64,000 bases of DNA from Mizuhopecten yessoensis (lineage: Eukaryota): the NCBI RefSeq assembly GCF_002113885.1, contig NW_018405595.1:1653965-1717964 (forward strand). The letters are read 5' to 3'. The notes below the pieces were generated by a model, which saw only the letters and a program-made list of their open reading frames with translations, did not search any database and was not told the origin of the DNA. A program made the translations under genes and the position numbers. This document shows positions 19,245 through 62,368 of this stretch, in pieces; within the stretch, counting starts at the first letter, position 1; every line of letters begins with the position of its first letter.

Positions 19245-22200
19245 ATGGCGATTCTTGGTGTCCTGCCTCTCTGTGTTATCTCGGTAGTGCTAGGCCGGGC
19301 TGTTGCACTTCCGGCCACAACGGATGCCGCCGCAACTGTAGGAACATCTATCAGTGACGTCAAACCAACTCCCGAAATCGCCTACAACTACACCGCTGAT
19401 GTCAAAGATGCTTTTAGACTTGCTTTGGCGAAGTTGCATAATAATTATGGACAAACTGTTAATCATGGTAAACTTTCGGCTATACTTGTAATTGACACTG
19501 CTACGGAAACAATTTCGTTGCCGTGATAATTTGGATTCGTGAAAATGAAATAATGTTGAAGTGTTAATGAGTATTTCGAAAATGGCGTATTCACTTTTCT
19601 TACTGATAAAAATACATACCTCGCAACGTATGACAGACTTTCAGTATGTTCATCAAGTATTAATTGACGTTTTAAAAATGATAAAAGCAAAGTTATACGT
19701 TAAGGTCATGATGCATTTTGACAATTTAGCCCTGACGGCATAGTAACCCCTGATATACCGTTCTTAAGGCCATACACGACATAACTGTGTCAGACATTTA
19801 TTTTCGAAAATACATTATGTTCAATTTCTCTTTTGATACCTATACAAGAATGGGGACTTTTGGAAAACAATTCTAGGCAATTCTGAATATATCTGTTAGA
19901 AAAACTTGTGTTACAAATGTCCATTTGATAGGCTTGAGAACAAGGTGATCGATACACAACGCTATGATTGGTAATCAATCGTATCTATTTTAGCAATTTT
20001 TTCTGTTGTTTACAGTATGATCACATTATACATGTTTAATCTGTCCTTATCACCTAAAAATGATAATATCTACAACTTATTGGGGTGATGTGTTTATCGA
20101 TTTTACATCTGACCCCTTAATCGTTTCTAACACTCCCTACACATCAGGAAAACTACTAAGCCTACACAATGTTATCAACTGTATAGCCCCTATGGACAGT
20201 GCTGTGTGTATAGACTTGGTACTGTGTGTATAGCTTGGTACTGTGTGTATGGACTTCGTATTGTGTGTATGGACTTCGTACTGTGTGTATGGACTTCGTA
20301 TTGTGTGTATGGACTTCGTACTGTGTGTATGGACTTCGTACTGTGTATATGGACTTCGTACTGTGTGTATGGACTTCGTACTGTGAGTATGGACTTCGTA
20401 CTGTGTGTATGGACTTGGTACTGTGTGTATGGACTTCGTACTGTCTGTATGGACTTCGTACTGTGTGTATGGACTTCGAACTGTGTGTATGGACTTCGTA
20501 CTGTGTGCATGGACTTCGTACTGTGTGTTTGGACTTGGGACTGTGTGTATGGACTTCGTACTGTGTGGATGGACTTCGTACTGTGTGTATGGACTTCGTA
20601 CTGGGTGTATGGACTTCGTACTGTGTATATGGACTTCGTACTGTGTGTATGGACTTCGTACGGTGAGTATGGACTTCGTACTGTGTGTATGGACTTCGTA
20701 TTGTGTGTATGGACTTCGTACTGTGTGTATGGGCTTCGTATTGTGTGTATGGACTTCGTACTGTGTGTATGGACTTCGAACTGTGTGTATGGACTTCGTA
20801 CTGTGTGCATGGACTTCGTACTGTGTGTTTGGACTTGGTACTGTGTGTATGGACTTCGTACTGTGTGTATGGACTTCGTACTGTGTGTATGGACTTCGTA
20901 CTGTGTGTATGGACTTCGTACTGTGTGTATGGACTTCGTACTGTGTGTATGGACTTCGTACTGTGTGTATGGACTTCGTACTGTGTGTATGGACTTCGTA
21001 CTGTGTGTATGGACTTCGTACTGTGTGTATGGACTTCGTACTGTGTGTATGGACTTCGTACTGTGTGTATGGACTTCGTACTGTGTGTATGGACTTCGTA
21101 CTGTGTGTATGGACTTCGTACTGTGTGTATGGACTTCGTACTGTGTGTATGGACTTCGTACTGTGTGTATGGACTTCGTACTGTGTGTATGGACTTCGTA
21201 CTGTGTGTATGGACTTCGTACTGTGTGTATGGACTTCGTACTGTGTGTATGGACTTCGTACTGTGTGTATGGACTTCGTACTGTGTGTATGGACTTCGTA
21301 CTGTGTGTATGGACTTCGTACTGTGTGTATGGACTTCGTACTGTGTGTATGGACTTCGTACTGTGTGTATGGACTTCGTACTGTGTGTATGGACTTCGTA
21401 CTGTGTGTATGGACTTCGTACTGTGTGTATGGACTTCGTACTGTGTGTATGGACTTCGTACTGTGTGTATGGACTTCGTACTGTGTGTATGGACTTCGTA
21501 CTGTGTGTATGGACTTCGTACTGTGTGTATGGACTTCGTACTGTGTGCATGGACTTCGTACTGTGTATATGGACTTCGTACTGTGTGTATGGACTTCGTA
21601 CTGTGTGTATGGACTTCGTACTGTTTGTATGGACTTCGAATACCAGGCGTTTTGCATGTATCATTAAGAACGATGGTAAACAAGTTGAATTATAAGAACG
21701 TGCTTGTGAGGAAGTCTTTTTCTGATATTCTAGACATAACAGCAACAATGAGAGCAGACTTCCATACGCTGTGCCCAGTACCGAGAAGGGAACCTGAAAC
21801 ACAGGCGGATTCCAAGATGGCATCACTTGGCCTTGACGCCATTCAACAGTTAAGCAACAGGTATGTAAGCTAGATTCATATAATTTTCGGCTAATGTCAT
21901 GTGTTCTTGAGAAGCATTATCACTGGCTAGTCCAGACTTACTAGCTGTAGGTACCTACATGTATCTACAAATTGCATCTTTTCAGAGTCAAGATGCGCTC
22001 TGACAAGTTCGGTATATCCTGATTATCCGTGTTTACCTAGCTGTATAGATGAATTACAGCATGTTTGGAAGTTATGTTCCGAGAGACTGCATTCCATTTA
22101 CAATGAAATCATGAACCTGTCACTTCGGTATATATTTCTATGCTATTGGATATTACTAGACTTTCAAGTAATAGCAAATACATCCAAGCAAAATAATGAA

Positions 22201-51802: not shown

Positions 51803-53314
51803 ATTTGACAAACCATATCATGCAACACTAATATGTATTATACACGTTACGATTACTGGTACGTTACTGATACCCACACCGCTCACGTTTTGCTGCAGTG
51901 TAATGCAAACGACAACATAAATAAATCAAGCTTAAAACGACATTGGTGTCCTCCTTTGACTCTGAAAAACCTTAACTCTATTTCTTTTTACAATATGACT
52001 GCGTTAGTATTCGTCAGGTAGGTACACTATCTTAATGAACTGACTTGTGACGGCTTTGTGTTATAATTTGTATGCACTTCCATTATCAACCTGTATCTGT
52101 ATAGAACTGCACTTCACGTCATAGCACAAGGACATTGACACTGTGCCTTGTTAAAGGTGATCGATTTGGATATAACGCTCAGTAATTATCACGTAAAGTC
52201 CTTTTAAACTTGACACTACAGATGTTTTTTTCCCACAGTCTTTTGTTCGTGTCTTATATGTATTTCTAGCTTTGAATTATTTGTCTGCAATTTATTGATT
52301 GACCACTTTTACATATATGCTATTTTGATTGAAAATTGTGACCAACTCATCATGGTGAAAATGTTCAATGCTAAAAGCAATCCTTCGTTTGACGTTACCG
52401 GTTTTATCTATCGATTCAATAGCCCTATTTTCTACAAATTGATATGCAATTCAACTTATGTATTATAAATTCATATATTGAATATGTTCAACATATAAGA
52501 GATCAATTTGTTATAACTAACTGGGCATAGATTAGAAAAAAACACTGAGTCATCATTTGTATGCCAACTCGTGGAGCATCCCATGACAATAGGTATAGTT
52601 TGAGTTGTAATCTATATTTTGATATTGCGAGTTAAGACAATTTAAATTTTGAGACGCTTGCCTAGCCGGTCACAATAACGAAGCCTATCAACGATCAAGT
52701 ATCCGGAAGATAAGTTACGGCAGTGTTCAAAAGTAGTCACACAACCTAAGGCCAGAAAAGGGGGTATTTCGATAACAATCTCCTGGTTGTACAAAAAGTT
52801 CAAGTAAAAATCTTACTTGTAAAGCCGGTTTTCTGTTCACTGAATCATAATAGTTTAACGAGATAAAAACAAATTAGCAAGAATAATGTTGCAGTAACAT
52901 TGTACAGAGTACAGTGATGTGGACCACAGGTTACTGGAACAATATATACTGACCACATTGAATATCATTATTTCATTTATGTGTAAAGGTTATCCCAGAA
53001 AACATGCTATTTACACTGTACAATATTTCTTCTACTGTCACGATAATATTTCTGTTACACGAATTTAGCAACAATCTCTTACAATACAAATGTATGAGTA
53101 TTATGCTTAACCAAAACCACTATTTACTACAACCTTAGGTTCATGTAAAAATGTTAATTGCAATGTATTTCAGTCATCAAAGAGCAAATAGGTGTGGCAT
53201 TTCAGTGAACTTGGTATATTTCTATGTTATGTAAATAACTTAATCGGTTTTTCTATTATATATTGCATTTTTCTATAATTCAGCATTTTCAGGTTTTTGA
53301 GACACAAGGTCAGT

Positions 53315-56300
53315 ATGATGAATACTGCGACAGACGATGCCTCAGTACGCGACAGTGTGAGAGACTATTATGGGAAGAGACTGAAGACAGTGGATGACCT
53401 TCAGACTCAGGCATGTGTGGCCCCTGGAAGAAAGGTTTCTAAATCGTTAAAAGAAGCCATAGACCTTGTTCACGAAGTTGTCTCTTCGAAGTAAGTTAAG
53501 TGAAATCAGGTTAAATTTGACGGGTGGGAAAAATAATGCGTTTTGTTAGGTAGATAAACTATGTGGTTTAAAATATACAATTACGTGAAGCGCGGTATCT
53601 TATGCAGATGACATTATATCTATTTACCTCACCGTGGATGGACTATCTGTATGGCTCGACGGTGGTTGAGATCTTGTGTTACATGTACCTATAACGACCT
53701 TTTTTTTCATAAGACGTCTACTGAATACCAACGGCTGCAAATTTAAAGGAAATGTAATAGCATAGTATACAAAAAAAAAAAATGCTTAATTTGATATATA
53801 CTGAAAGGATAAAGAAACGCAGGGTTAACATTTGAGGTGATTTAATGGCATGTATTTGAATGTTATATACAATATTTCGTATAAGTATTAAAAACAACAT
53901 CTTTAATAAACACATTACCAAGAGACCAATAAATCATGAGTAATTGAAGCACATTTGACGGTACCCCCAAATATTGCAAAGTAAAATCGACTGACTCGTC
54001 CCCCCGTCCCCCCGATGTGTAAACCTCAAGGGTATGAAGTAGTATGACAAGATGTGTTGACGAAAGTGTCATCATTATTCTACACATGTTTGTTGCATTT
54101 TAACACTTTCTCTATGTGACACGGTACATTACACGGTTGAGTAACTTAACTGAAGGCAGCGGTTCGAGTGCAATACCAAATACTCGTCGGACCGGTTAAT
54201 ATAATTTTACGTAATTTTAACATGAATTTAGTAATTTTTGCATATTTTGTTATCCTGCGTTTCTTTATCTTTAAAAATTCTCAGCCTTGGTAGTTCCCGT
54301 CGTTAAGGTGTTGTCAAGGGAAAACCGACTAATTATCAGCGTGATATATAAAAAGACAGTATATGTATTTTGATAATTATATAGTGTTTTACAAATCAAG
54401 CTATTATGCCTCATCCAAGTGCCACTATTTAAGTTTAGGAGAAAATAGTTATTTTTCATATCAATTAAGAAATCATTATCATATTGATGTCATATACGTG
54501 ACAATATTTGGTCCGTGGCCAGGTACTATGGATGTGGGCTTGTAATCCCAGAGAAGCTTGAAGGGATGAAGATTTTGGACCTTGGGAGCGGCAGTGGTCG
54601 TGATTGTTTTGCACTCAGTAAGCTGGTTGGTCCTACAGGTCATGTGACAGGAATCGACATGACAGATGAACAGGTACTGTCGCCACAGACATAATGGGGT
54701 TCAGCTATATAGTCTGTCAGCGTGATGGCCAGGAAGTACCAAGGAATGTAGCATGTTATCATGCAGGTTGTGCATATACTAGAAGAAATTATTGGGTCTT
54801 TTGATATGGTCTTTAATTTCTTAAGTTTTAGCTCGTTTGCCTGTGAACTCATGCAATAATGAGGTATCAGTCATTTGTCTGTCTTAGATTGTTCAAATCA
54901 CACTTGACGTTAATATGGATGCAAGATTTTAACATTTGTTCCCTTTTTCAAGTCTGAAATATTCAAAGAGTTGGTGTATCAAATTCAGGATGACAAAGAG
55001 AGGAAGTCTTCATAAGATTTCTAAGGTATTAATAACTGTATTGCTCAGGGGTGCAATTTTTGCAAAGAATTATAATAGTACAGAGCTTTGAAATGTTACA
55101 CGTGTTACTGTGTTGAATTTGTATGCAATTCCTTAAATCCATACGTAAGTTTGCATGCATGAAGAACTTTCAAATTCACTCAGCTCAATAACATTGACAA
55201 AGTCACAGAGATAGAAATATGTTAAAATCTTTAAACGACCCTTTTTTCAAGATTAATTAGGCATAGAACAAAGATATTTCGATTGTAACATGTTAGGATG
55301 AGGAGTTGTTACTTGATACAGATAAATAACGTTTGTGCATTATAAAGGTTCAAAGGTCGAATGTGATGAAACGTTAACCGTTTTTTCTTATGAACCAAAA
55401 ACTGTACAGCTTTTGCTGAGGTAAAATTACTTTCACTTTAAATCATCAGATTTACGGTCATTAAATATCCTAACAATGCCTGCAGCATCGATATTTGGAA
55501 AGTAGTGAAGGTGGGAAAAGTCTTGCTTGTATATACATGTATGTTTTTTCAAATTAATGCTTAAACCCAATAATGACCAATGTCATCTCTAAACTTGCTG
55601 ATTTTCAGTCTTTTATTTTTGATGGCAGCTTGATGTAGCCCGAGAGTACATAGAATATCATACAGAGAAGTTCGGCTATAAGGAACCGAACATTGACTTT
55701 GTAAAGGGTTACATAGAGAAGCTAACAGATGCAGGACTGCCATCAGACCACTATGACATCATCGTGTGAGTGAATTGCATCACTATTTGAGAAAACATTA
55801 TATCACCGTTTTTCCACTTTTACATTCAAAATGTTGGGATCAGTTCATTTTAACTGGCAACTATACTATATCTTTTTCGTATTTACCCCTTTGTGATAGA
55901 AATTTGGCTAGCACCTCCTAGTCAGATATTGCTGAACAAAATGGAACACTTTGGTTGTTGGTATAACGTAATGGTGAAATGATTATTGATATATATTGTG
56001 TAGTATTCATTATATTAATAGAGGGTTAAATAGCAAATATAAACAGAAAATTAAGTTTATTACTCTTTGCTTTGAAATGGCAATGCGTGCTGCTGTTATA
56101 ATGTTAGTTGTTAGCTATCTTAAAACAAATATAGTTTCATTGGCGTTTATCTGCACTTTTGCAGCACATAATGTGTTACTATTGGGCTTATGTGTATTAT
56201 TAGTGTTTATTGGTTATTCCAGCTCCAATTGTACGGTGAACCTGTCCACCGACAAGAAGGCTGTCCTGCAGGAGTCCTACAATGTCCTCAAGGTAATGAA

Positions 56301-59300
56301 GTAACACGATGATGGCTTTACATGTGATGTGCAGTGGCCAGTCTTTAATTGGGACAAAACACCTGGTGAAGTAGGATATAAAGATAATGGAAAATTACAC
56401 ATTATTATGTTGCGTTGAAGTACTGCTATTGCATACACTTATGTATACAAGCATTTAAAACGATTTTGGGTGGTCGGGTGGCGTGAAAAGGTATGGGGTC
56501 ACCTGTCCGACCACGTGCGTTTTCTCCTGGTCATTCGGTTAACCCAAACAGTAATACCCTCGCGCGCTAACATCTGGGCCAACAAGAGTGATTAGTATAA
56601 GTTGTATAAACTTGTTTCCTTATTGCTGTAAAATATAAAAAGATTATATAGAATAAAATAATATTATTTTATTCTATATTTTTCTTCGCAAAGACCTGTT
56701 TATTTATTATCTACTAAAGATTATGTATCTATATTTAAAAATTATTCCCTTCATTCTGGATTCATATTTGTTTAAACGTACGAATAATAATTATATGTAT
56801 ATTATATGGTTAATGTCTTGATTTTTGTTTTGTTATGTAATATTTACCTTTTTTACATTCCTGCTTTATGAGATGAACCCAGTTACAATGTCTATACCGA
56901 GTGAAATCCGACTGGTTAGAAAATAACGGTTGTGTTTATTTTCTTTCTTTCAAATCTTACAATAATGAAATAACATTTTCTTCTAACTTAAAATAAAAAA
57001 TGATTTAGAAGAAATGTTTACAAAAGTCTAGCATACACGAGCCAAACCCCAGTTTCTCCTAAGTCTACGTATGTAAGATTATAAGACTATTTTATGTCAA
57101 GTGGTATAGGATAGGGAAAGTCCACCCGAGGGTTTTTTAAATTCGGTAAAACTCGAATTACAAAAATAAGCTCAGATACCATGAAAATGCGTTAGGACTG
57201 GCTACGATTTTGAAAAAAAGCCCTCCAAGACGTCATTAGAATCACTGTGACAATCTTCCTCGGCAAGCGACACTACCTCAGAAACATAGTTATTACAAAC
57301 AGGCATGCCCTGAAGGTCTTGCATTGATCTATTTTAAGCATCTCGTATATCCGTTACCTTCAAAGTTTGTCATTGTTAAAATTCATTTAACGGCCTTGAG
57401 AGCATGCAATCCTAAATATCATTCCTCGGCAAGCGACACTACCTCAGAAACATAGTTATTACAAACAGGCATGCCCTGAAGGTCTTGCATTGATCTATTT
57501 TAAGTAATACTTTATGTAGACCGTACCCTTTTCTGCTCTTTTCAAGTATGGCCGTGGATGTTTGCATACCTTATCTACGTTTTTGTTCTAAATTAAGTGT
57601 TGTGTTTGCATTGTGTGTATCGTGTGTTTAGGAAAACTTCGGTTAAGAGGTTGGAGAACAGTATTAATCATTAATGTATGTGAGTATGGATAGTCTACAC
57701 CTCTGGTGCAGAATTTGGTATCAGAACCGAGTCTCTAAGGTTTGCTCTATTAGTATTTCACAATTTGTAAACTAATGTTATGCTCTTTCAAATGGTATAT
57801 TATGTTGAATCAAATAAGGCATATTGACGTCACTATTTGTCATAGCTATCTACCTTGACGTACAGCTTGTTTCAATCTCGGTTTACTATGAAAAGATTAC
57901 TTAACGTTATAGTCAAGGCAATATCTAAATGTATATGATTTCAGGAAGGTGGGGAACTTTTCTTCAGCGATATCTACGCGGATCGAACTTTGGAAGAGTC
58001 AATACGCAAACACAAAGTATTATGGGGTATGTGCATGCTACTTATAGACAATATGGATCATATATTATAATTATGATACAATGCATGTCATTAATTATCA
58101 ACGAAACTATGAAGTGTTAAGTTCTATATCTTTATAATCCTCCTGAAAATGTTGTAAATGTTTAATTATTTCCCATTTTGCCCTGGATACATATGATAAT
58201 ATTGATGGAATGAAAAACGTAAAATAAAAACCTGCGTCATACAATTATAAGACATGGTTAACAGAAAAGTACCTCTTTTAATGTTGCCAAAATGAAGTTT
58301 CCCCTCAAGTTATAAATGCGACAATAGTATAACAATTCTGATCTTATATTAGGATTCCAACTTTGTAAGGATATAAATGACATTTCGTTTGGCAAATCCC
58401 TATATTTCCTTTGAAGATTCAATTTAAAGCTTAATGTGTCGTCATGTTTGATTGTCACACAACACGGGTTAGCTCACCAACAATGTGTGTCGAAAGTAAA
58501 CGTGAATGTTAATAAACTTTCAAAGTACAAAAGCCTTATGTAGAAGGTCTACAAGCATAAGATTAATACAGAAAATAAAGGTTACCTCTTAGAAAAATTA
58601 TATCCTCGGATTTCCAACTGTTTTGCCCCTATCAATACAGATTGGTCCTAGAAAGACGACACAGTAGTGTGATGCAGTGTATTCATTTTTAGCGTACTGT
58701 ATCTATCACCAAATGTTGTCATTCGGAATACCCTTTCGTCATTTTCTACGAAACTGAGGTAGCAAAGGCGAGGTGTTCCGAATGCAAATGTTGTAGGTGC
58801 CAATACTTATGTTCATCTTTCCTATTCCATCTTTGCGTAATGCAGAGTTATCTTCTCTTGGGAGCAGGTATTGATTGTTACGTCATTTGTTTGTGAGAGT
58901 AACGTCATCAATTTTTGAGAAAACGACGTGATTTTCTCACACAAACCAATGACGTAACAATCAATACCTGCCCCCAAGAGAAGATAACTCTGCAATACGC
59001 AAAGACGGAATATACGATAAAAATGATCAGAGAGTAGTGGGGTTAGACTGTTTCAAACAAGGTGGGTAAGCTTGTAGAAAAGTACCGATGGAAAAGTCTT
59101 TACAGAAACTTAGGGGCTGGTGACCAGCCTATAGTGCCGTTGATAGCGACTGACCGGCTGAGACACGATGTAGTCTTAGAAATGCACATGTATTATAACA
59201 AATATGTGTAATGGTATAAAAATTGGGCAAAAAAAGAGTGCATTATCTTCCATCTTTAATGCCTTAATGTTGGCAAAAGCATCTCGTATATCCGATACCT

Positions 59301-59833
59301 TCAAAGTTTGTCATTGTTAAAATTCATTTAACGGCCTTGAGAGCATGCAATCCTGAATATCATTACTTCATACTCTTTTCATCTTTGTTGAATGATTATA
59401 AATATTACTAAAATTGGTCAATGTTTGATAAATATTGTCGAAAATTGCCCATTATTGTTAAAAAACTGACAATAGCCAAAATGATAGCTAGACATATTTT
59501 GTTGAATGGTTATTGGAAGCAAATAAGCTTAATTTGTTATGTCATTACCATTAAAAAAAGGTGAACGATACCGGTGACCCTCTTCATTCCATTTTTCAAA
59601 CAAGAAAATTGGAATAAAAAGTTTATTATAATTGCGAAAGACTCTGTCATAAGGTGATTCGTACATGTGATGTTAAATAAACTCTATGTATTCCCTAACA
59701 GGTGAGGGCTTTGGTGGAGCTCTATGGTGGAAGAAGCTACATGACCTGGCTAGTGAGACTGGCTTTAGCAAGCCTTACATGGTCAGCACATCACCTATCC
59801 CCGTCGACCGGGAGGACTTCAAGGCAATCGTAG
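53315..59833 (+). CDS. AS3MT: Arsenite methyltransferase-like SAM-dependent methyltransferase, partial (3' exons not found in window); exons 53315-53490, 54523-54673, 55629-55765, 56223-56292, 57945-58026, 59702-59833
   Basis: Phase-consistent GT-AG exons read VRDYYGKRLKTVDDLQTQACV...KYYGCGLVIPEKLEGMKILDLGSGSGRDCFALSKLVGPTGHVTGIDMTDEQLDVA...GYIEKL...DIIVSNCTVNLSTDKKAVLQESYNVLKEGGELFFSDIY...HKVLWGEGFGGALWWK. This is colinear with vertebrate AS3MT. Confidence 0.95.
56490..56640 (+). mobile_element. SINE-like fragment in AS3MT intron 4
   Basis: gcgttttctcctggtcattcggtt...cgcgcgctaacatctgggccaacaagagtgattagtataagttgtataaacttgtttc...gtaaaatataaa resembles mollusc CORE/V-type SINE 3' halves, from memory. 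Confidence 0.4.
57256..57504. repeat. 83-bp direct duplication (57256-57338; 57422-57504) bracketing an 83-bp copy of 59280-59362
   Basis: Direct sequence comparison; the insert differs from the downstream copy at two positions. Confidence 0.9.
58823..59012. mobile_element. Foldback MITE, ~75-bp TIRs, TA at both ends
   Basis: ta-ttccatctttgcgtaatgcagagttatcttctcttgggagcaggtattgattgttacgtcatt... pairs with ...aatgacgtaacaatcaatacctgcccccaagagaagataactctgcaatacgcaaagacggaa-ta. Confidence 0.85.
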
Positions 59834-59885
59834 GTCAGTACTGTTTTAGGAGACAACCGGTCAACAATACTGGAAAGTGACCAAC

Positions 59886-61009: not shown

Positions 61010-62368
61010 GCTTTATTGTCATGCTGGATTTGTCAGCTGCATTTGACGTTATCGACAATGGCATACTTTATAAATGTCTTGAGTACTATTATGGAGTGTT
61101 TGATACCGACTTTGGTGGATACAGTCTTATCCGAATTAACGACGACAGTGTGTTGCCATCAGATGTACCATATCACAAGAACAAGTACTAGATTTCAGGG
61201 TTACGCAAGGGTCGGTGTTAGGACCACGAAAATGTTGTCTGTACTCCAATCCGAACGGAGAGATTTGTCGTCGCCATAGCCTTCGCTATCATTGCTATGC
61301 TGATGAGACACGCATTTGCATGGTCATCAAACCACAGGGCAGTTGGGATACAATTACAGAAATTCTGAAAGCTTGTCTGACAGATATCAGTACCTGGAGG
61401 AACGCAAACATTCTAAAGCTTAATCCGGAAAAGACGAATCTAATCGTCTTTTCCCCAAAGTGTCAGCATACAATGGCTCTCCAGGTCAAGGTAGGGGCCA
61501 GAACTATTGAGACTGTCCGAGCTGTTAAAAACCTAGGGGTATACTTTGCTAGTTCACTGAACATGGAGAAACAAGTGGACGCTATTGCCAAATCCTGTTA
61601 CTACCAGATCAGGAACATCGGCTGTATCCGTCAGTTTATAACTGCAAATGCATGCAATATGTTGGTGCATTCACTTGTTACATCGCAGTTGGCTTATGGT
61701 AACGCCCTGCTCTGTGGTATATCTGACAAACAAACTAGTCGTCTGAAGAGGGTCAGGAACACTGAAGCACGGCGGGTTACTCGTACTCGAAAGTTAGAGC
61801 ACACCTGTGCTGTATTCATTGCACTGGTTACCTGTACGATACAGGTCACTGGACACATTTTTGTGTACACATACAAGGACATACAAGAACAACTCCCCAG
61901 TACCTACATGAGCTTGTTATCCTGTATCAGCCGTCACGATCACTGCGGTCGGAATCAGAATCATTGTTGTGTGTCCCAAAATCTCGTACTTTGACCTATG
62001 AAAACCGGTGCTTTAGGAAGGTTTCGGCCACGTTGTGGAATAGCTTTCCATCTGCTATTAGAAAGTCAAATACCCTGGAAAATTCAAGATAGACATCAAA
62101 ACTCACGTCTTCATGTCTGCATTTTTGGCTCTTTGCAAAGACGTCATATAAATACCCCTCTTTGTGTATTCATTTATGTGCACATCGCGATAATTATCTG
62201 CTTGCTTAATATATAAAAGTGATAGTAAGCCTTTGTTTTTTGTTTCACAATTATAACTAATTATATATAATACTATTATCCATATGGTGTAAAGCGCTTT
62301 AGAGTAATTTTACAAATTAAATAGGGCGTTATATAAATGTTGTATATCATTTATTGTTATTATTATTA
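61010..62368 (+). mobile_element. 5'-truncated, decayed L2/Crack-type LINE (RT relic) in an AS3MT intron
   Basis: LDLSAAFDVID, QGSVLGP, HCYADET, LKLNPEKT, VKNLGV, LVHSLVTS.L.YGNALL, with frameshifts. Tail gtaaagcgctttagag...gggcgttatataaat...(tta)n. Confidence 0.88.

What the first reader, a model, noticed from the sequence alone, without database searches (positions are those of the whole stretch)
59702..59724. AS3MT homologue with catalytic Cys206 replaced by Gly
Seen: exons 5-6 read HKVLWGEGFGGALWW (GGC at 59707-59709) against human HKVLWGECLGGALYW. The equivalents of Cys32 (QACV), Cys61 (YGCG) and Cys156 (SNCT) and the SAM motif LDLGSGSG are intact, and the six exons have no lesions. Established: Cys156 and Cys206 bind As(III) and are required for methylation by human AS3MT, as are the equivalent pair in algal ArsM. 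Inference: a maintained paralogue with changed chemistry, for example acting on already methylated or thiolated arsenicals, Se/S acceptors or a non-metalloid substrate. This is of interest because marine molluscs accumulate organoarsenicals. The neighbouring Leu-to-Phe and Val-to-Thr (SNCT) changes hint at a remodelled pocket rather than a single error.
Basis: partly seen in the sequence, partly recalled or inferred. Interest (0 to 1): 0.72.

Follow-up and report, generated by a model that had tools for sequence, protein, structure and literature searches.

The report
Scallop arsenic methyltransferase copy lacking Cys206
The scallop carries a second, intact and transcribed copy of the arsenic-methylating enzyme AS3MT in which an arsenic-binding cysteine is replaced by glycine, and the same replacement has arisen again and again in duplicated AS3MT genes of other animals, pointing to an unstudied enzyme variant with a changed job.

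Summary
Codon 59707-59709 is GGC (Gly) at the column of human Cys206 and CmArsM Cys224. DNA contigs from two independent studies and a spliced RNA contig show the same letters.

The gene is Mizuhopecten yessoensis "arsenite methyltransferase-like isoform X2" (P0054). It has nine coding exons; six lie in the window and three beyond it, and all are intact.

A canonical tandem copy with Cys206, SNCV and a CC..CC tail lies 49 kb downstream. On the Gly-copy branch dN/dS is 0.26, and neutrality is rejected (p 1.6e-8).

The main new result is that Cys206-to-Gly, always Gly, recurs in AS3MT duplicates:
- Named species: Pecten, Ostrea, Sinanodonta, Solemya, Lineus, three frogs, a ray and a pipefish.
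- Independent origin: DNA of the Pecten and Ostrea pairs groups them by species. Proteins pair the Sinanodonta, Solemya and Bombina copies with a canonical copy of the same species.
- Age: one frog clade predates the Spea-Xenopus split.

The Gly copies repeatedly share Phe207, Thr157 and Tyr252 and lose C-terminal cysteines, while the SAM site stays intact.

I read it as a maintained methyltransferase with a remodelled acceptor site that no longer binds inorganic As(III) in the canonical way. The substrate is unknown. I found no paper describing this class.

The parts
53282..53490 (+). Coding exon holding the N-terminus and the Cys32 equivalent (QACV, 53408-53419). An in-frame ATG lies at 53315. 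RefSeq isoform X2 adds 13 residues from an upstream exon that I did not locate.
   Evidence: Exact spliced mapping of P0054 onto the DNA; motif search.
54523..54673 (+). Exon with the Cys61 equivalent (YGCG) and SAM motif I (LDLGSGSG). It is 93.8% identical in DNA to copy B.
   Evidence: (PF13847, E 8.6e-11). An RNA contig splices 54670 to 55626.
55629..55765 (+). Exon 3 of the methyltransferase core.
   Evidence: RNA joints 54670 to 55626 and 55765 to 56223.
56223..56292 (+). Exon with the Cys156 equivalent (TGT 56230-56232) followed by Thr (ACG 56233-56235), where all 177 canonical proteins compared have Val.
57945..58026 (+). Exon 5, ending ...HKVLWG.
   Evidence: RNA joint 58025 to 59701.
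59702..59833 (+). Exon 6, the exon of the finding.
   Evidence: DNA and RNA contigs are identical here.
59707..59709 (+). GGC, Gly232 of P0054, at the Cys206 (human) / Cys224 (CmArsM) column.
   Evidence: No variant in X13, X7 or X15.
59710..59712 (+). TTT, Phe at the Ile/Leu207 column. Phe occurs in 7 of 13 Gly206 proteins against 8 of 177 canonical ones.

Best explanation
The window carries copy A of a two-gene AS3MT family in the scallop Mizuhopecten yessoensis.

Shown:
- Copy A is an intact nine-exon gene that is transcribed, correctly spliced and selectively constrained.
- Its product keeps the AS3MT fold, the SAM-binding residues and the equivalents of Cys32, Cys61 and Cys156.
- It has Gly for the arsenic-binding Cys206, Phe for Ile/Leu207, Thr for Val157 and Tyr for Phe252. 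It has lost the C-terminal CC..CC tail.
- Canonical copy B lies 49 kb downstream on the same strand.
- This is not a one-off. Cys206-to-Gly has appeared independently in duplicated AS3MT genes of many animals, often with the same accompanying changes. In frogs it has been kept since before the Spea-Xenopus split.

Inferred:
- After duplication one copy is released from the three-thiol binding of inorganic As(III). It sheds a thiol ligand and the cysteine tail.
- Removing the side chain (Gly, never Ser) opens the acceptor pocket, which is then relined with Phe, Tyr and Thr. The SAM chemistry is kept.
- The product is therefore most likely still a SAM-dependent methyltransferase with a changed acceptor.
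- My preferred guess is a trivalent arsenical that already carries carbon groups and needs fewer thiol ligands, such as DMAs(III) or a related organoarsenical. A non-arsenic acceptor is not excluded.
For: Gene and codon:
- Reading and register.
- Identity with RefSeq protein P0054 and the exact nine-exon mapping.
- Only two loci in the genome.
- Copy B reads GECIAG and SNCV.

Reads:
- Two independent DNA runs and one spliced RNA contig carry GGC.
- Six RNA or RNA-like runs hold 0.10-0.13 of the sampled words, about the exon share of the stretch.

Selection:
- A-B dS 0.74, dN/dS 0.18.
- Branch model: background omega 0.106, copy A 0.26 (omega = 1 rejected, p 1.6e-8), Pecten Gly copy 0.37 (p 6e-4).

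Fold and SAM site:
- The AlphaFold model has pLDDT 85.7 and matches human AS3MT 8xt7 at TM 0.94, rmsd 1.9 A.
- The equivalents of hAS3MT Gly78, Met103, Gln107 and Glu137 are invariant, and those of Tyr59, Ser79 and Ile136 are 90% or more conserved, in a 46-protein alignment that includes 11 Gly copies. PMC3790734 names these as SAM-network residues.

Recurrence:
- 13 Gly206 proteins in the first set and 3 more in frogs, always Gly.
- On a tree built without the trait columns, 11 Gly rows need 11 changes. A clade of the seven bivalve rows is rejected (delta lnL 977).
- DNA of six genes groups the pairs by species. The all-Gly-together tree is worse by 373 lnL, and by 200 at third positions.
- The Ostrea pair lies 9.3 Mb apart on opposite strands.
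- Gene order in Pecten is the reverse of Mizuhopecten.
- A frog Gly206 clade (Spea, Xenopus tropicalis, P0140) is supported at 99.

Co-changes:
- Tyr252: 7/13 against 1/177.
- Phe207: 7/13 against 8/177.
- Thr157: 3/13 against 0/177.
- The C-terminal tail holds fewer Cys in 11 of 14 Gly copies and more in none.

Biochemistry from the literature:
- C156 and C206 are needed for both methylation steps.
- iAs(III) binds three Cys, MMA(III) two and DMA(III) one (PMC3877260).
Against: - No activity was measured. In human AS3MT the C206S mutant is inactive in both steps (PMC3877260), so the copy could simply be catalytically dead.
- Expression looks low. RNA contig depth is about 6-10, against about 129 for the contig I assign to copy B. 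One raw-read RNA run had no reads on exon 6.
- Omega on the Gly branches is 2.5-3.5 times the background, which also fits relaxed constraint.
- Phylogenetically paired sign tests of the co-changes have little power: Tyr252 5:0 p 0.06, Phe207 p 0.03, tail p 0.016. The Fisher tests ignore relatedness.
- The clade for the AU test was named after the tree had been seen.
- Tyr252 is absent from the vertebrate Gly copies, so the remodelling is not uniform.
- I had no coordinates, so I could not show that residues 157, 186, 207 and 252 line the pocket. That rests on their places at strand ends in the model.
Confidence: 0.7

Rival explanations
1. Pseudoenzyme. Copy A is maintained but no longer catalyses methyl transfer. 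It acts as a binding, buffering or regulatory protein, for example for SAM/SAH or for an arsenical held by the remaining cysteines.
For: Human C206S is inactive in both methylation steps (PMC3877260). Purifying selection is present but relaxed (omega 0.26 against 0.106). Expression appears low. The cysteine tail is lost.
Against: Every SAM-network residue and motif I are kept in copy A, and they are invariant or 90% or more conserved across the alignment that includes 11 Gly copies. The pocket changes converge on specific residues (Phe207, Tyr252, Thr157), which looks like re-tuning of a site and not decay of one. Cys32, Cys61 and Cys156 are all retained.
Confidence: 0.15
2. Slow non-functionalisation. 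Copy A is a duplicate on its way to becoming a pseudogene, and the Gly is the first disabling hit.
For: The branch is longer and omega is higher than in copy B. Transcript depth is lower. The C-terminal motif is degraded.
Against: - At dS about 0.7 all nine exons and all splice sites are still intact.
- Omega = 1 is rejected at p 1.6e-8.
- The same state, with the same partner residues, recurs in at least ten lineages.
- It is retained in a frog clade older than the Spea-Xenopus split.
- The replacement is always Gly and never one of the other single-step neighbours of TGY.
Confidence: 0.08
3. Single ancient origin. One old Gly206 paralogue exists in bivalves and looks species-specific only because gene conversion from the canonical neighbour keeps homogenising it, with selection preserving the few diagnostic residues.
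For: - The copies are tandem in Mizuhopecten and Pecten.
- Exons 2 and 4 of A and B have low dS (0.28) against 0.95-1.45 in exons 3, 5 and 6. Exon 2 is 93.8% identical in DNA, including a few intron bases.
- At codon positions 1+2 the (A, Pecten-Gly) grouping is not rejected (p 0.19 and 0.10).
Against: - Third positions strongly group the pairs by species (delta lnL 50-200).
- Exon 6 of the Pecten pair is not an island of old divergence (dS 0.39 against 0.35 gene-wide).
- The Ostrea pair lies 9.3 Mb apart on opposite strands yet is still sister.
- Gene order is opposite in the two scallops.
Confidence: 0.12
4. Artefact. The Gly is an assembly error, a rare allele or an unused exon.
For: None found.
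Against: DNA contigs from two further studies and a spliced RNA contig carry the same letters. No second exon-6-like sequence lies in or near the gene. The RefSeq model P0054 is identical to my exon model.
Confidence: 0.01

Closest known systems
Animal arsenite methyltransferase AS3MT (human, PDB 8xt7) and the scallop's own canonical copy B (P0038)
   Same: Sequence E 2e-94 and 47% identity to the human enzyme. The model overlays it at TM 0.94, rmsd 1.9 A. It is 80% identical to copy B and has the same nine-exon structure with equal exon lengths. Motif I, the SAM-network residues and the Cys32, Cys61 and Cys156 equivalents are kept.
   Different: Gly for Cys206, Phe207, Thr157 and Tyr252. The C-terminal tail holds one Cys in place of CC..CC. 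Copy A evolves faster and its transcript appears scarcer.
Algal ArsM (Cyanidioschyzon merolae CmArsM, PDB 4fr0/4fsd/6cx6; Chlamydomonas CrArsM, 5evj)
   Same: Same fold (Foldseek E about 1e-32 to 1e-33). The arsenic-binding pair Cys174/Cys224 aligns with the columns discussed here.
   Different: Copy A has no equivalent of Cys224. The PDB holds an engineered C224A mutant (5jx7), but I know of no natural variant of this kind that has been described.
Three-cysteine ArsM enzymes and arsinothricin-type ArsM. Recalled from my own knowledge (fungal and bacterial enzymes lacking the first cysteine that methylate MAs(III) but not As(III)), plus NCBIfam NF040538.
   Same: They set a precedent: members of this family that lack one conserved cysteine act on arsenicals that already carry carbon. 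Weak hits to NF040538 and NF038099 lie far below their cut-offs.
   Different: Those enzymes lack the Cys32-type residue, not a member of the As-binding pair. Copy A is not a member of those bacterial families (113 bits against a cut-off of 500).
Cys156-to-Gly AS3MT variants seen here (Saccostrea, P0014, Latimeria, Talpa, Callorhinus)
   Same: The other arsenic-binding cysteine is also replaced by Gly. For Talpa a canonical protein is encoded on the same contig.
   Different: A different cysteine is lost. I did not study these further.

Membership tests
AS3MT/ArsM family (by descent) | Class I SAM-methyltransferase core with motif I and full-length similarity to AS3MT/ArsM | tested here: met
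   PF13847 on exon 2. phmmer E 2e-94 to 8xt7 and about 1e-70 to ArsM structures. Foldseek TM 0.94 to 8xt7. NF008823 is the best NCBIfam hit, though below its bacterial cut-off.
AS3MT/ArsM family (by descent) | SAM-network residues of hAS3MT (Tyr59, Gly78, Ser79, Met103, Gln107, Ile136, Glu137; PMC3790734) | tested here: met
   The equivalents Y85, G104, S105, M129, Q133, I162 and E163 of P0054 are all present, and are invariant or nearly so in the 46-protein alignment.
Canonical arsenite (As(III)) methyltransferase | All four conserved cysteines (human 32, 61, 156, 206), with 156 and 206 as the As(III)-binding pair | tested here: not met
   C32, C61 and C156 are present. Position 206 is Gly (GGC 59707-59709), confirmed in DNA and RNA.
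Canonical arsenite (As(III)) methyltransferase | C-terminal cysteine-rich tail (CC..CC) typical of animal AS3MT | tested here: not met
   The tail of copy A holds one Cys. Copy B and 12 of 14 canonical sisters hold four.
Canonical arsenite (As(III)) methyltransferase | Methylation of As(III) and MAs(III) with SAM | not testable with these tools
   Needs an enzyme assay.
Processed or decaying pseudogene | Stops, frameshifts, lost splice sites, no transcript, dN/dS near 1 | tested here: not met
   Nine exons with GT..AG borders and an open frame. A spliced RNA contig exists. Omega is 0.26 and omega = 1 is rejected.

The most novel reading that the evidence does not exclude
Gly206 AS3MT paralogues form a class of animal methyltransferases that has evolved repeatedly and is so far unrecognised. 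Each arises when a duplicated AS3MT drops one arsenic-binding thiol and its cysteine tail, and its pocket is re-lined (Phe207, Tyr252, Thr157).

The class would carry out a reaction the canonical enzyme does poorly. Candidates are the late methylation steps that lead to trimethyl- and tetramethyl-arsenic species or other organoarsenicals, or methylation of a non-arsenic acceptor.
Probability: 0.3. Interest if true: 0.85.

Novelty: new variant of a known kind. Interest (0 to 1): 0.72.

Why it matters
AS3MT is usually treated as a single-copy enzyme with one job and four indispensable cysteines. One survey states that its duplication was rare (PMC5398495).

This gene shows that duplicates do occur. 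One copy repeatedly loses the same arsenic ligand in the same way, to Gly and with the same partner substitutions, and is then kept under selection, in frogs for a very long time. Parallel change of that kind is strong natural evidence for a second function in the family.

Two open questions would then have a concrete candidate to test:
- What the arsenic-independent roles of AS3MT-type proteins are.
- Which animal enzymes make the higher-methylated or complex arsenic species found in seafood.

Natural paired controls are available in one genome: copy A against copy B.

Tried and rejected
1. Synteny anchor. An 814-base match between the upstream flank of the Pecten Gly copy and the A-B spacer looked like a positional anchor. 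It proved to be a retrotransposon with more than 40 copies in the genome, so I dropped that argument. Gene order and strand were used instead.

2. Alternative Cys-bearing exon 6. Copy B's exon 6 finds only the known exon in 66 kb around copy A, and the RNA uses that exon.

3. Exon 6 against the representative protein library. It returned mostly fragments, but these gave the first hint of other GEG proteins.

4. A second AS3MT in the ray Narcine. None appeared among the best 120 hits. Whether its Gly206 gene is its only copy stays open.

5. Literature. Searches for AS3MT in molluscs and bivalves, Cys206 with paralogues, as3mt.1/as3mt.2/AS3MT-like and 8xt7 found nothing on a Gly206 class.

6. 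Careful (bootstrap) tree. It did not finish in time, so SH-aLRT support from the quick tree is what I cite.

7. Residue distances. The structure tool gives no coordinates, so I could not measure distances between the co-varying residues and the arsenic site.

8. Joined spliced model. Whole-protein steps used the database protein P0054, which equals the spliced product. Scripts joined exons read from files only for codon alignments.

9. Assembly gap. The 1,284-N gap between copies A and B (contig 1742896-1744179) was left as it is.

Full report
**What is there**

The window is contig C2268:1653965-1717964 of a 988-Mb assembly.

P0054 (391 aa) maps exactly onto the + strand as nine coding exons with GT..AG borders:
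- In the window: 53282-53490, 54523-54673, 55629-55765, 56223-56292, 57945-58026 and 59702-59833.
- Beyond the window: L005:2243-2382, L005:2590-2721 and L006:1849-1929.

Exon 6 opens GT|GAG|GGC|TTT|GGT|GGA, which gives ...HKVLWG-E-G-F-G-G-A-L-W-W. GGC is at 59707-59709.

HMMER alignments to human AS3MT (8xt7) and to CmArsM (4fr0, 4kw7) place this Gly on Cys206/Cys224.

**Is it real and is it used?**

- DNA contigs from two studies other than the probable source (X13, X7) cover 59325-59850. They show no difference inside exon 6.
- An RNA-library contig (X15, record 12) joins 58025 to 59701 across a GT..AG intron with no differing letter.
- Another RNA contig splices exons 2-3-4. Its only difference, 56259 G>A, is synonymous.
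- Six RNA or RNA-like runs from four studies hold 0.10-0.13 of the sampled words. The exons make up about 0.11 of the stretch laid.
- Expression looks modest. Contig depth is 6-10. A contig whose loose end reads like exon 1 of the neighbouring copy has depth about 129. One raw-read RNA run had no reads on exon 6. Contig depth is a poor measure of expression, so I treat this only as a hint.
- No second exon-6-like sequence exists nearby.

**The neighbour**

The genome holds exactly two AS3MT loci. Copy B (P0038) starts 49 kb downstream on the same strand. It has the canonical GECIAGALWW, SNCV and a ...CCTDSKCC end.

A and B are 80% identical in protein. Their introns no longer align. dS is 0.74 and dN/dS is 0.18.

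I fitted a codon branch model by script to the two scallop pairs:
- Background omega is 0.106.
- The copy A branch has omega 0.26. Omega = 1 is rejected (2 delta lnL = 32, p 1.6e-8).
- The Pecten Gly copy has omega 0.37 (p 6e-4).
- A single omega for all branches is rejected (p 9e-5).

Copy A has therefore been under purifying selection, though weaker than on copy B.

**The wider pattern**

Searching with exon 6 alone returned several proteins reading GEG. Full-length searches and an alignment of about 200 AS3MT proteins showed Gly at column 206 in:
- Pecten maximus, Ostrea edulis, Sinanodonta woodiana, Solemya velum and Lineus longissimus;
- Narcine bancroftii and Nerophis lumbriciformis;
- several unnamed metagenome or transcriptome proteins;
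- Bombina bombina, Spea bombifrons and Xenopus tropicalis.

The replacement is Gly every time. It is never Ser, Arg, Tyr, Phe or Trp, the other single-step neighbours of a TGY codon.

On a tree built with twelve trait columns removed, each Gly protein sits next to a canonical protein of the same species or genus. The supports are Sinanodonta 99, Solemya 100 and two unnamed pairs 99-100, within an oyster clade at 100 and a scallop clade at 100. Eleven Gly rows need eleven changes. A clade of the seven bivalve Gly rows is rejected (delta lnL 977, p-AU 4e-48). That group was named after the tree had been seen.

I extracted the coding DNA of the Pecten and Ostrea pairs:
- The species-wise tree is best. 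The all-Gly-together tree is worse by 373 lnL overall and by 200 at third positions.
- Within scallops, joining A with the Pecten Gly copy is rejected at third positions (delta lnL 50-68). It is not rejected at positions 1+2 (p 0.10-0.19). That is what convergent amino-acid change would produce.
- The Pecten pair has dS 0.35 and the Ostrea pair 0.55.
- In Pecten the Cys copy lies upstream of the Gly copy, the reverse of Mizuhopecten. In Ostrea the two genes are 9.3 Mb apart on opposite strands.

Gene conversion between tandem neighbours is therefore not a sufficient explanation.

In frogs the Gly copies of Spea and Xenopus tropicalis, together with P0140, form their own clade (support 99). It is separate from the canonical copies of the same species. 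That paralogue is thus older than the Spea-Xenopus split. Bombina has a younger Gly copy of its own.

**What changes together with Gly206**

I compared 13 Gly proteins with 177 canonical ones:

| Residue (human numbering) | Gly206 proteins | Canonical proteins | Fisher p |
|---|---|---|---|
| Tyr at Phe252 | 7/13 | 1/177 | 8e-9 |
| Phe at 207 | 7/13 | 8/177 | 5e-6 |
| Thr at Val157 | 3/13 | 0/177 | 2.5e-4 |
| Phe at Tyr59 | 3/12 | 0/174 | - |
| Ile/Met at 186 | 11/13 | 59/177 | - |
| Ile kept at 273 | 2/13 | 138/177 | - |

- Copy A and the independently arisen Ostrea copy share Gly206, Phe207, Thr157 and Tyr252.
- The C-terminal tail has four Cys in 12 of 14 canonical sisters. It has fewer in 11 of 14 Gly copies and more in none.
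- The Fisher tests ignore relatedness. Sign tests on ten phylogenetically independent pairs are weaker: Tyr252 5:0 (p 0.06), Phe207 5-6:0 (p 0.03), tail 7-8:0-1 (p 0.016).
- The near-invariance of Phe252 and Val157 in canonical enzymes makes repeated change on just these branches hard to ascribe to chance.

In the AlphaFold model (pLDDT 85.7):
- Thr183 directly follows strand 175-181.
- Ile212 lies at the end of strand 201-214.
- Gly232 and Phe233 lie in the loop after helix 226-230.
- Tyr278 is the first residue of strand 278-286.

In class I methyltransferases these strand ends face the substrate side. That is an inference from the fold, not a measured distance. The model overlays the human crystal structure at TM 0.94. 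Motif I and the published SAM-network residues are all kept (PMC3790734).

**How it most likely works**

Established background:
- Inorganic As(III) is held by three cysteines, MMA(III) by two and DMA(III) by one.
- C156 and C206 are needed for both methylation steps of the human enzyme.
- C32 and C61 are needed only for the first step (PMC3877260).

Shown here is a copy that keeps the SAM machinery and three cysteines but has deleted the side chain at 206 and the cysteine tail. It has done so in parallel with many other lineages and under continued constraint.

Inferred is that it is a working methyltransferase whose acceptor site needs fewer thiol ligands and more room. I put 0.7 on "maintained paralogue with an altered acceptor site". 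Within that, I put about 0.3 on an already methylated or otherwise organic trivalent arsenical as substrate. The main rival is a pseudoenzyme (0.15).

The variant also occurs in freshwater and terrestrial-breeding animals. This speaks against an explanation tied to marine organoarsenic loads.

**Novelty**

[quoted passage not shown] My literature searches found no description of a Gly206 or Gly156 class.

By descent it is a member of the AS3MT family. It fails the four-cysteine criterion of a canonical arsenite methyltransferase. I file it as a new variant of a known kind.

**Limits**

- No biochemistry was done and no coordinates were available.
- Expression evidence comes mainly from assembled contigs of one library.
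- Several Gly proteins come from unnamed samples.
- Tree support comes from a quick search.

No N was filled.

Noticed in passing
proteins P0036, P0042, P0048 (Saccostrea), P0014, P0254 (Latimeria), P0266 (Talpa), P0296 (Callorhinus): The other arsenic-binding cysteine, Cys156, is also replaced by Gly (SNGV) in several AS3MT proteins. Talpa has an otherwise near-identical canonical protein (P0249) on the same contig. This looks like a sister phenomenon to Gly206.
   Followed up: partly
window 61140-61991 (+), inside intron 6 of copy A: A 284-codon open frame resembling the reverse-transcriptase part of a non-LTR retrotransposon. It appears to be an insertion in the long intron between exons 6 and 7.
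   Followed up: no
window 58796-59153 and 56469-56647 (introns 5 and 4 of copy A): Very high-copy repeats. Summed contig depth is 1e4 to 5e5 in the DNA runs, and they are also abundant in RNA libraries, with many variants and loose ends.
   Followed up: no
L007:7113-8512 (contig 1745077-1746476, between copies A and B): A retrotransposon fragment with RT-like frames on the minus strand. It has more than 40 copies in this genome at 73-97% identity, and a 71% match next to the Pecten AS3MT locus. It is a false synteny anchor.
   Followed up: yes
L011:12301-12718 and L012:11093-14074 (Pecten maximus AS3MT pair, intron 2): Both Pecten paralogues carry a tandem-repeat array just upstream of exon 3. 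It spans about 0.4 kb in the Gly copy and about 3 kb in the Cys copy.
   Followed up: no
window 20001-22000: A stretch with strong GC skew (0.24) and AT skew (-0.31). Its translation repeats a motif of about 20 residues (…CVWT..CVYGLRTVCMDFVL…), so it is probably a minisatellite.
   Followed up: no
window 54504-54679 against contig 1757345-1757521 (exon 2 of copies A and B): Exon 2 is 93.8% identical in DNA between the paralogues, including about 19 intron bases upstream. Other exons are 77-87% identical. Exons 2 and 4 have dS 0.28. This may be a local gene-conversion tract.
   Followed up: partly
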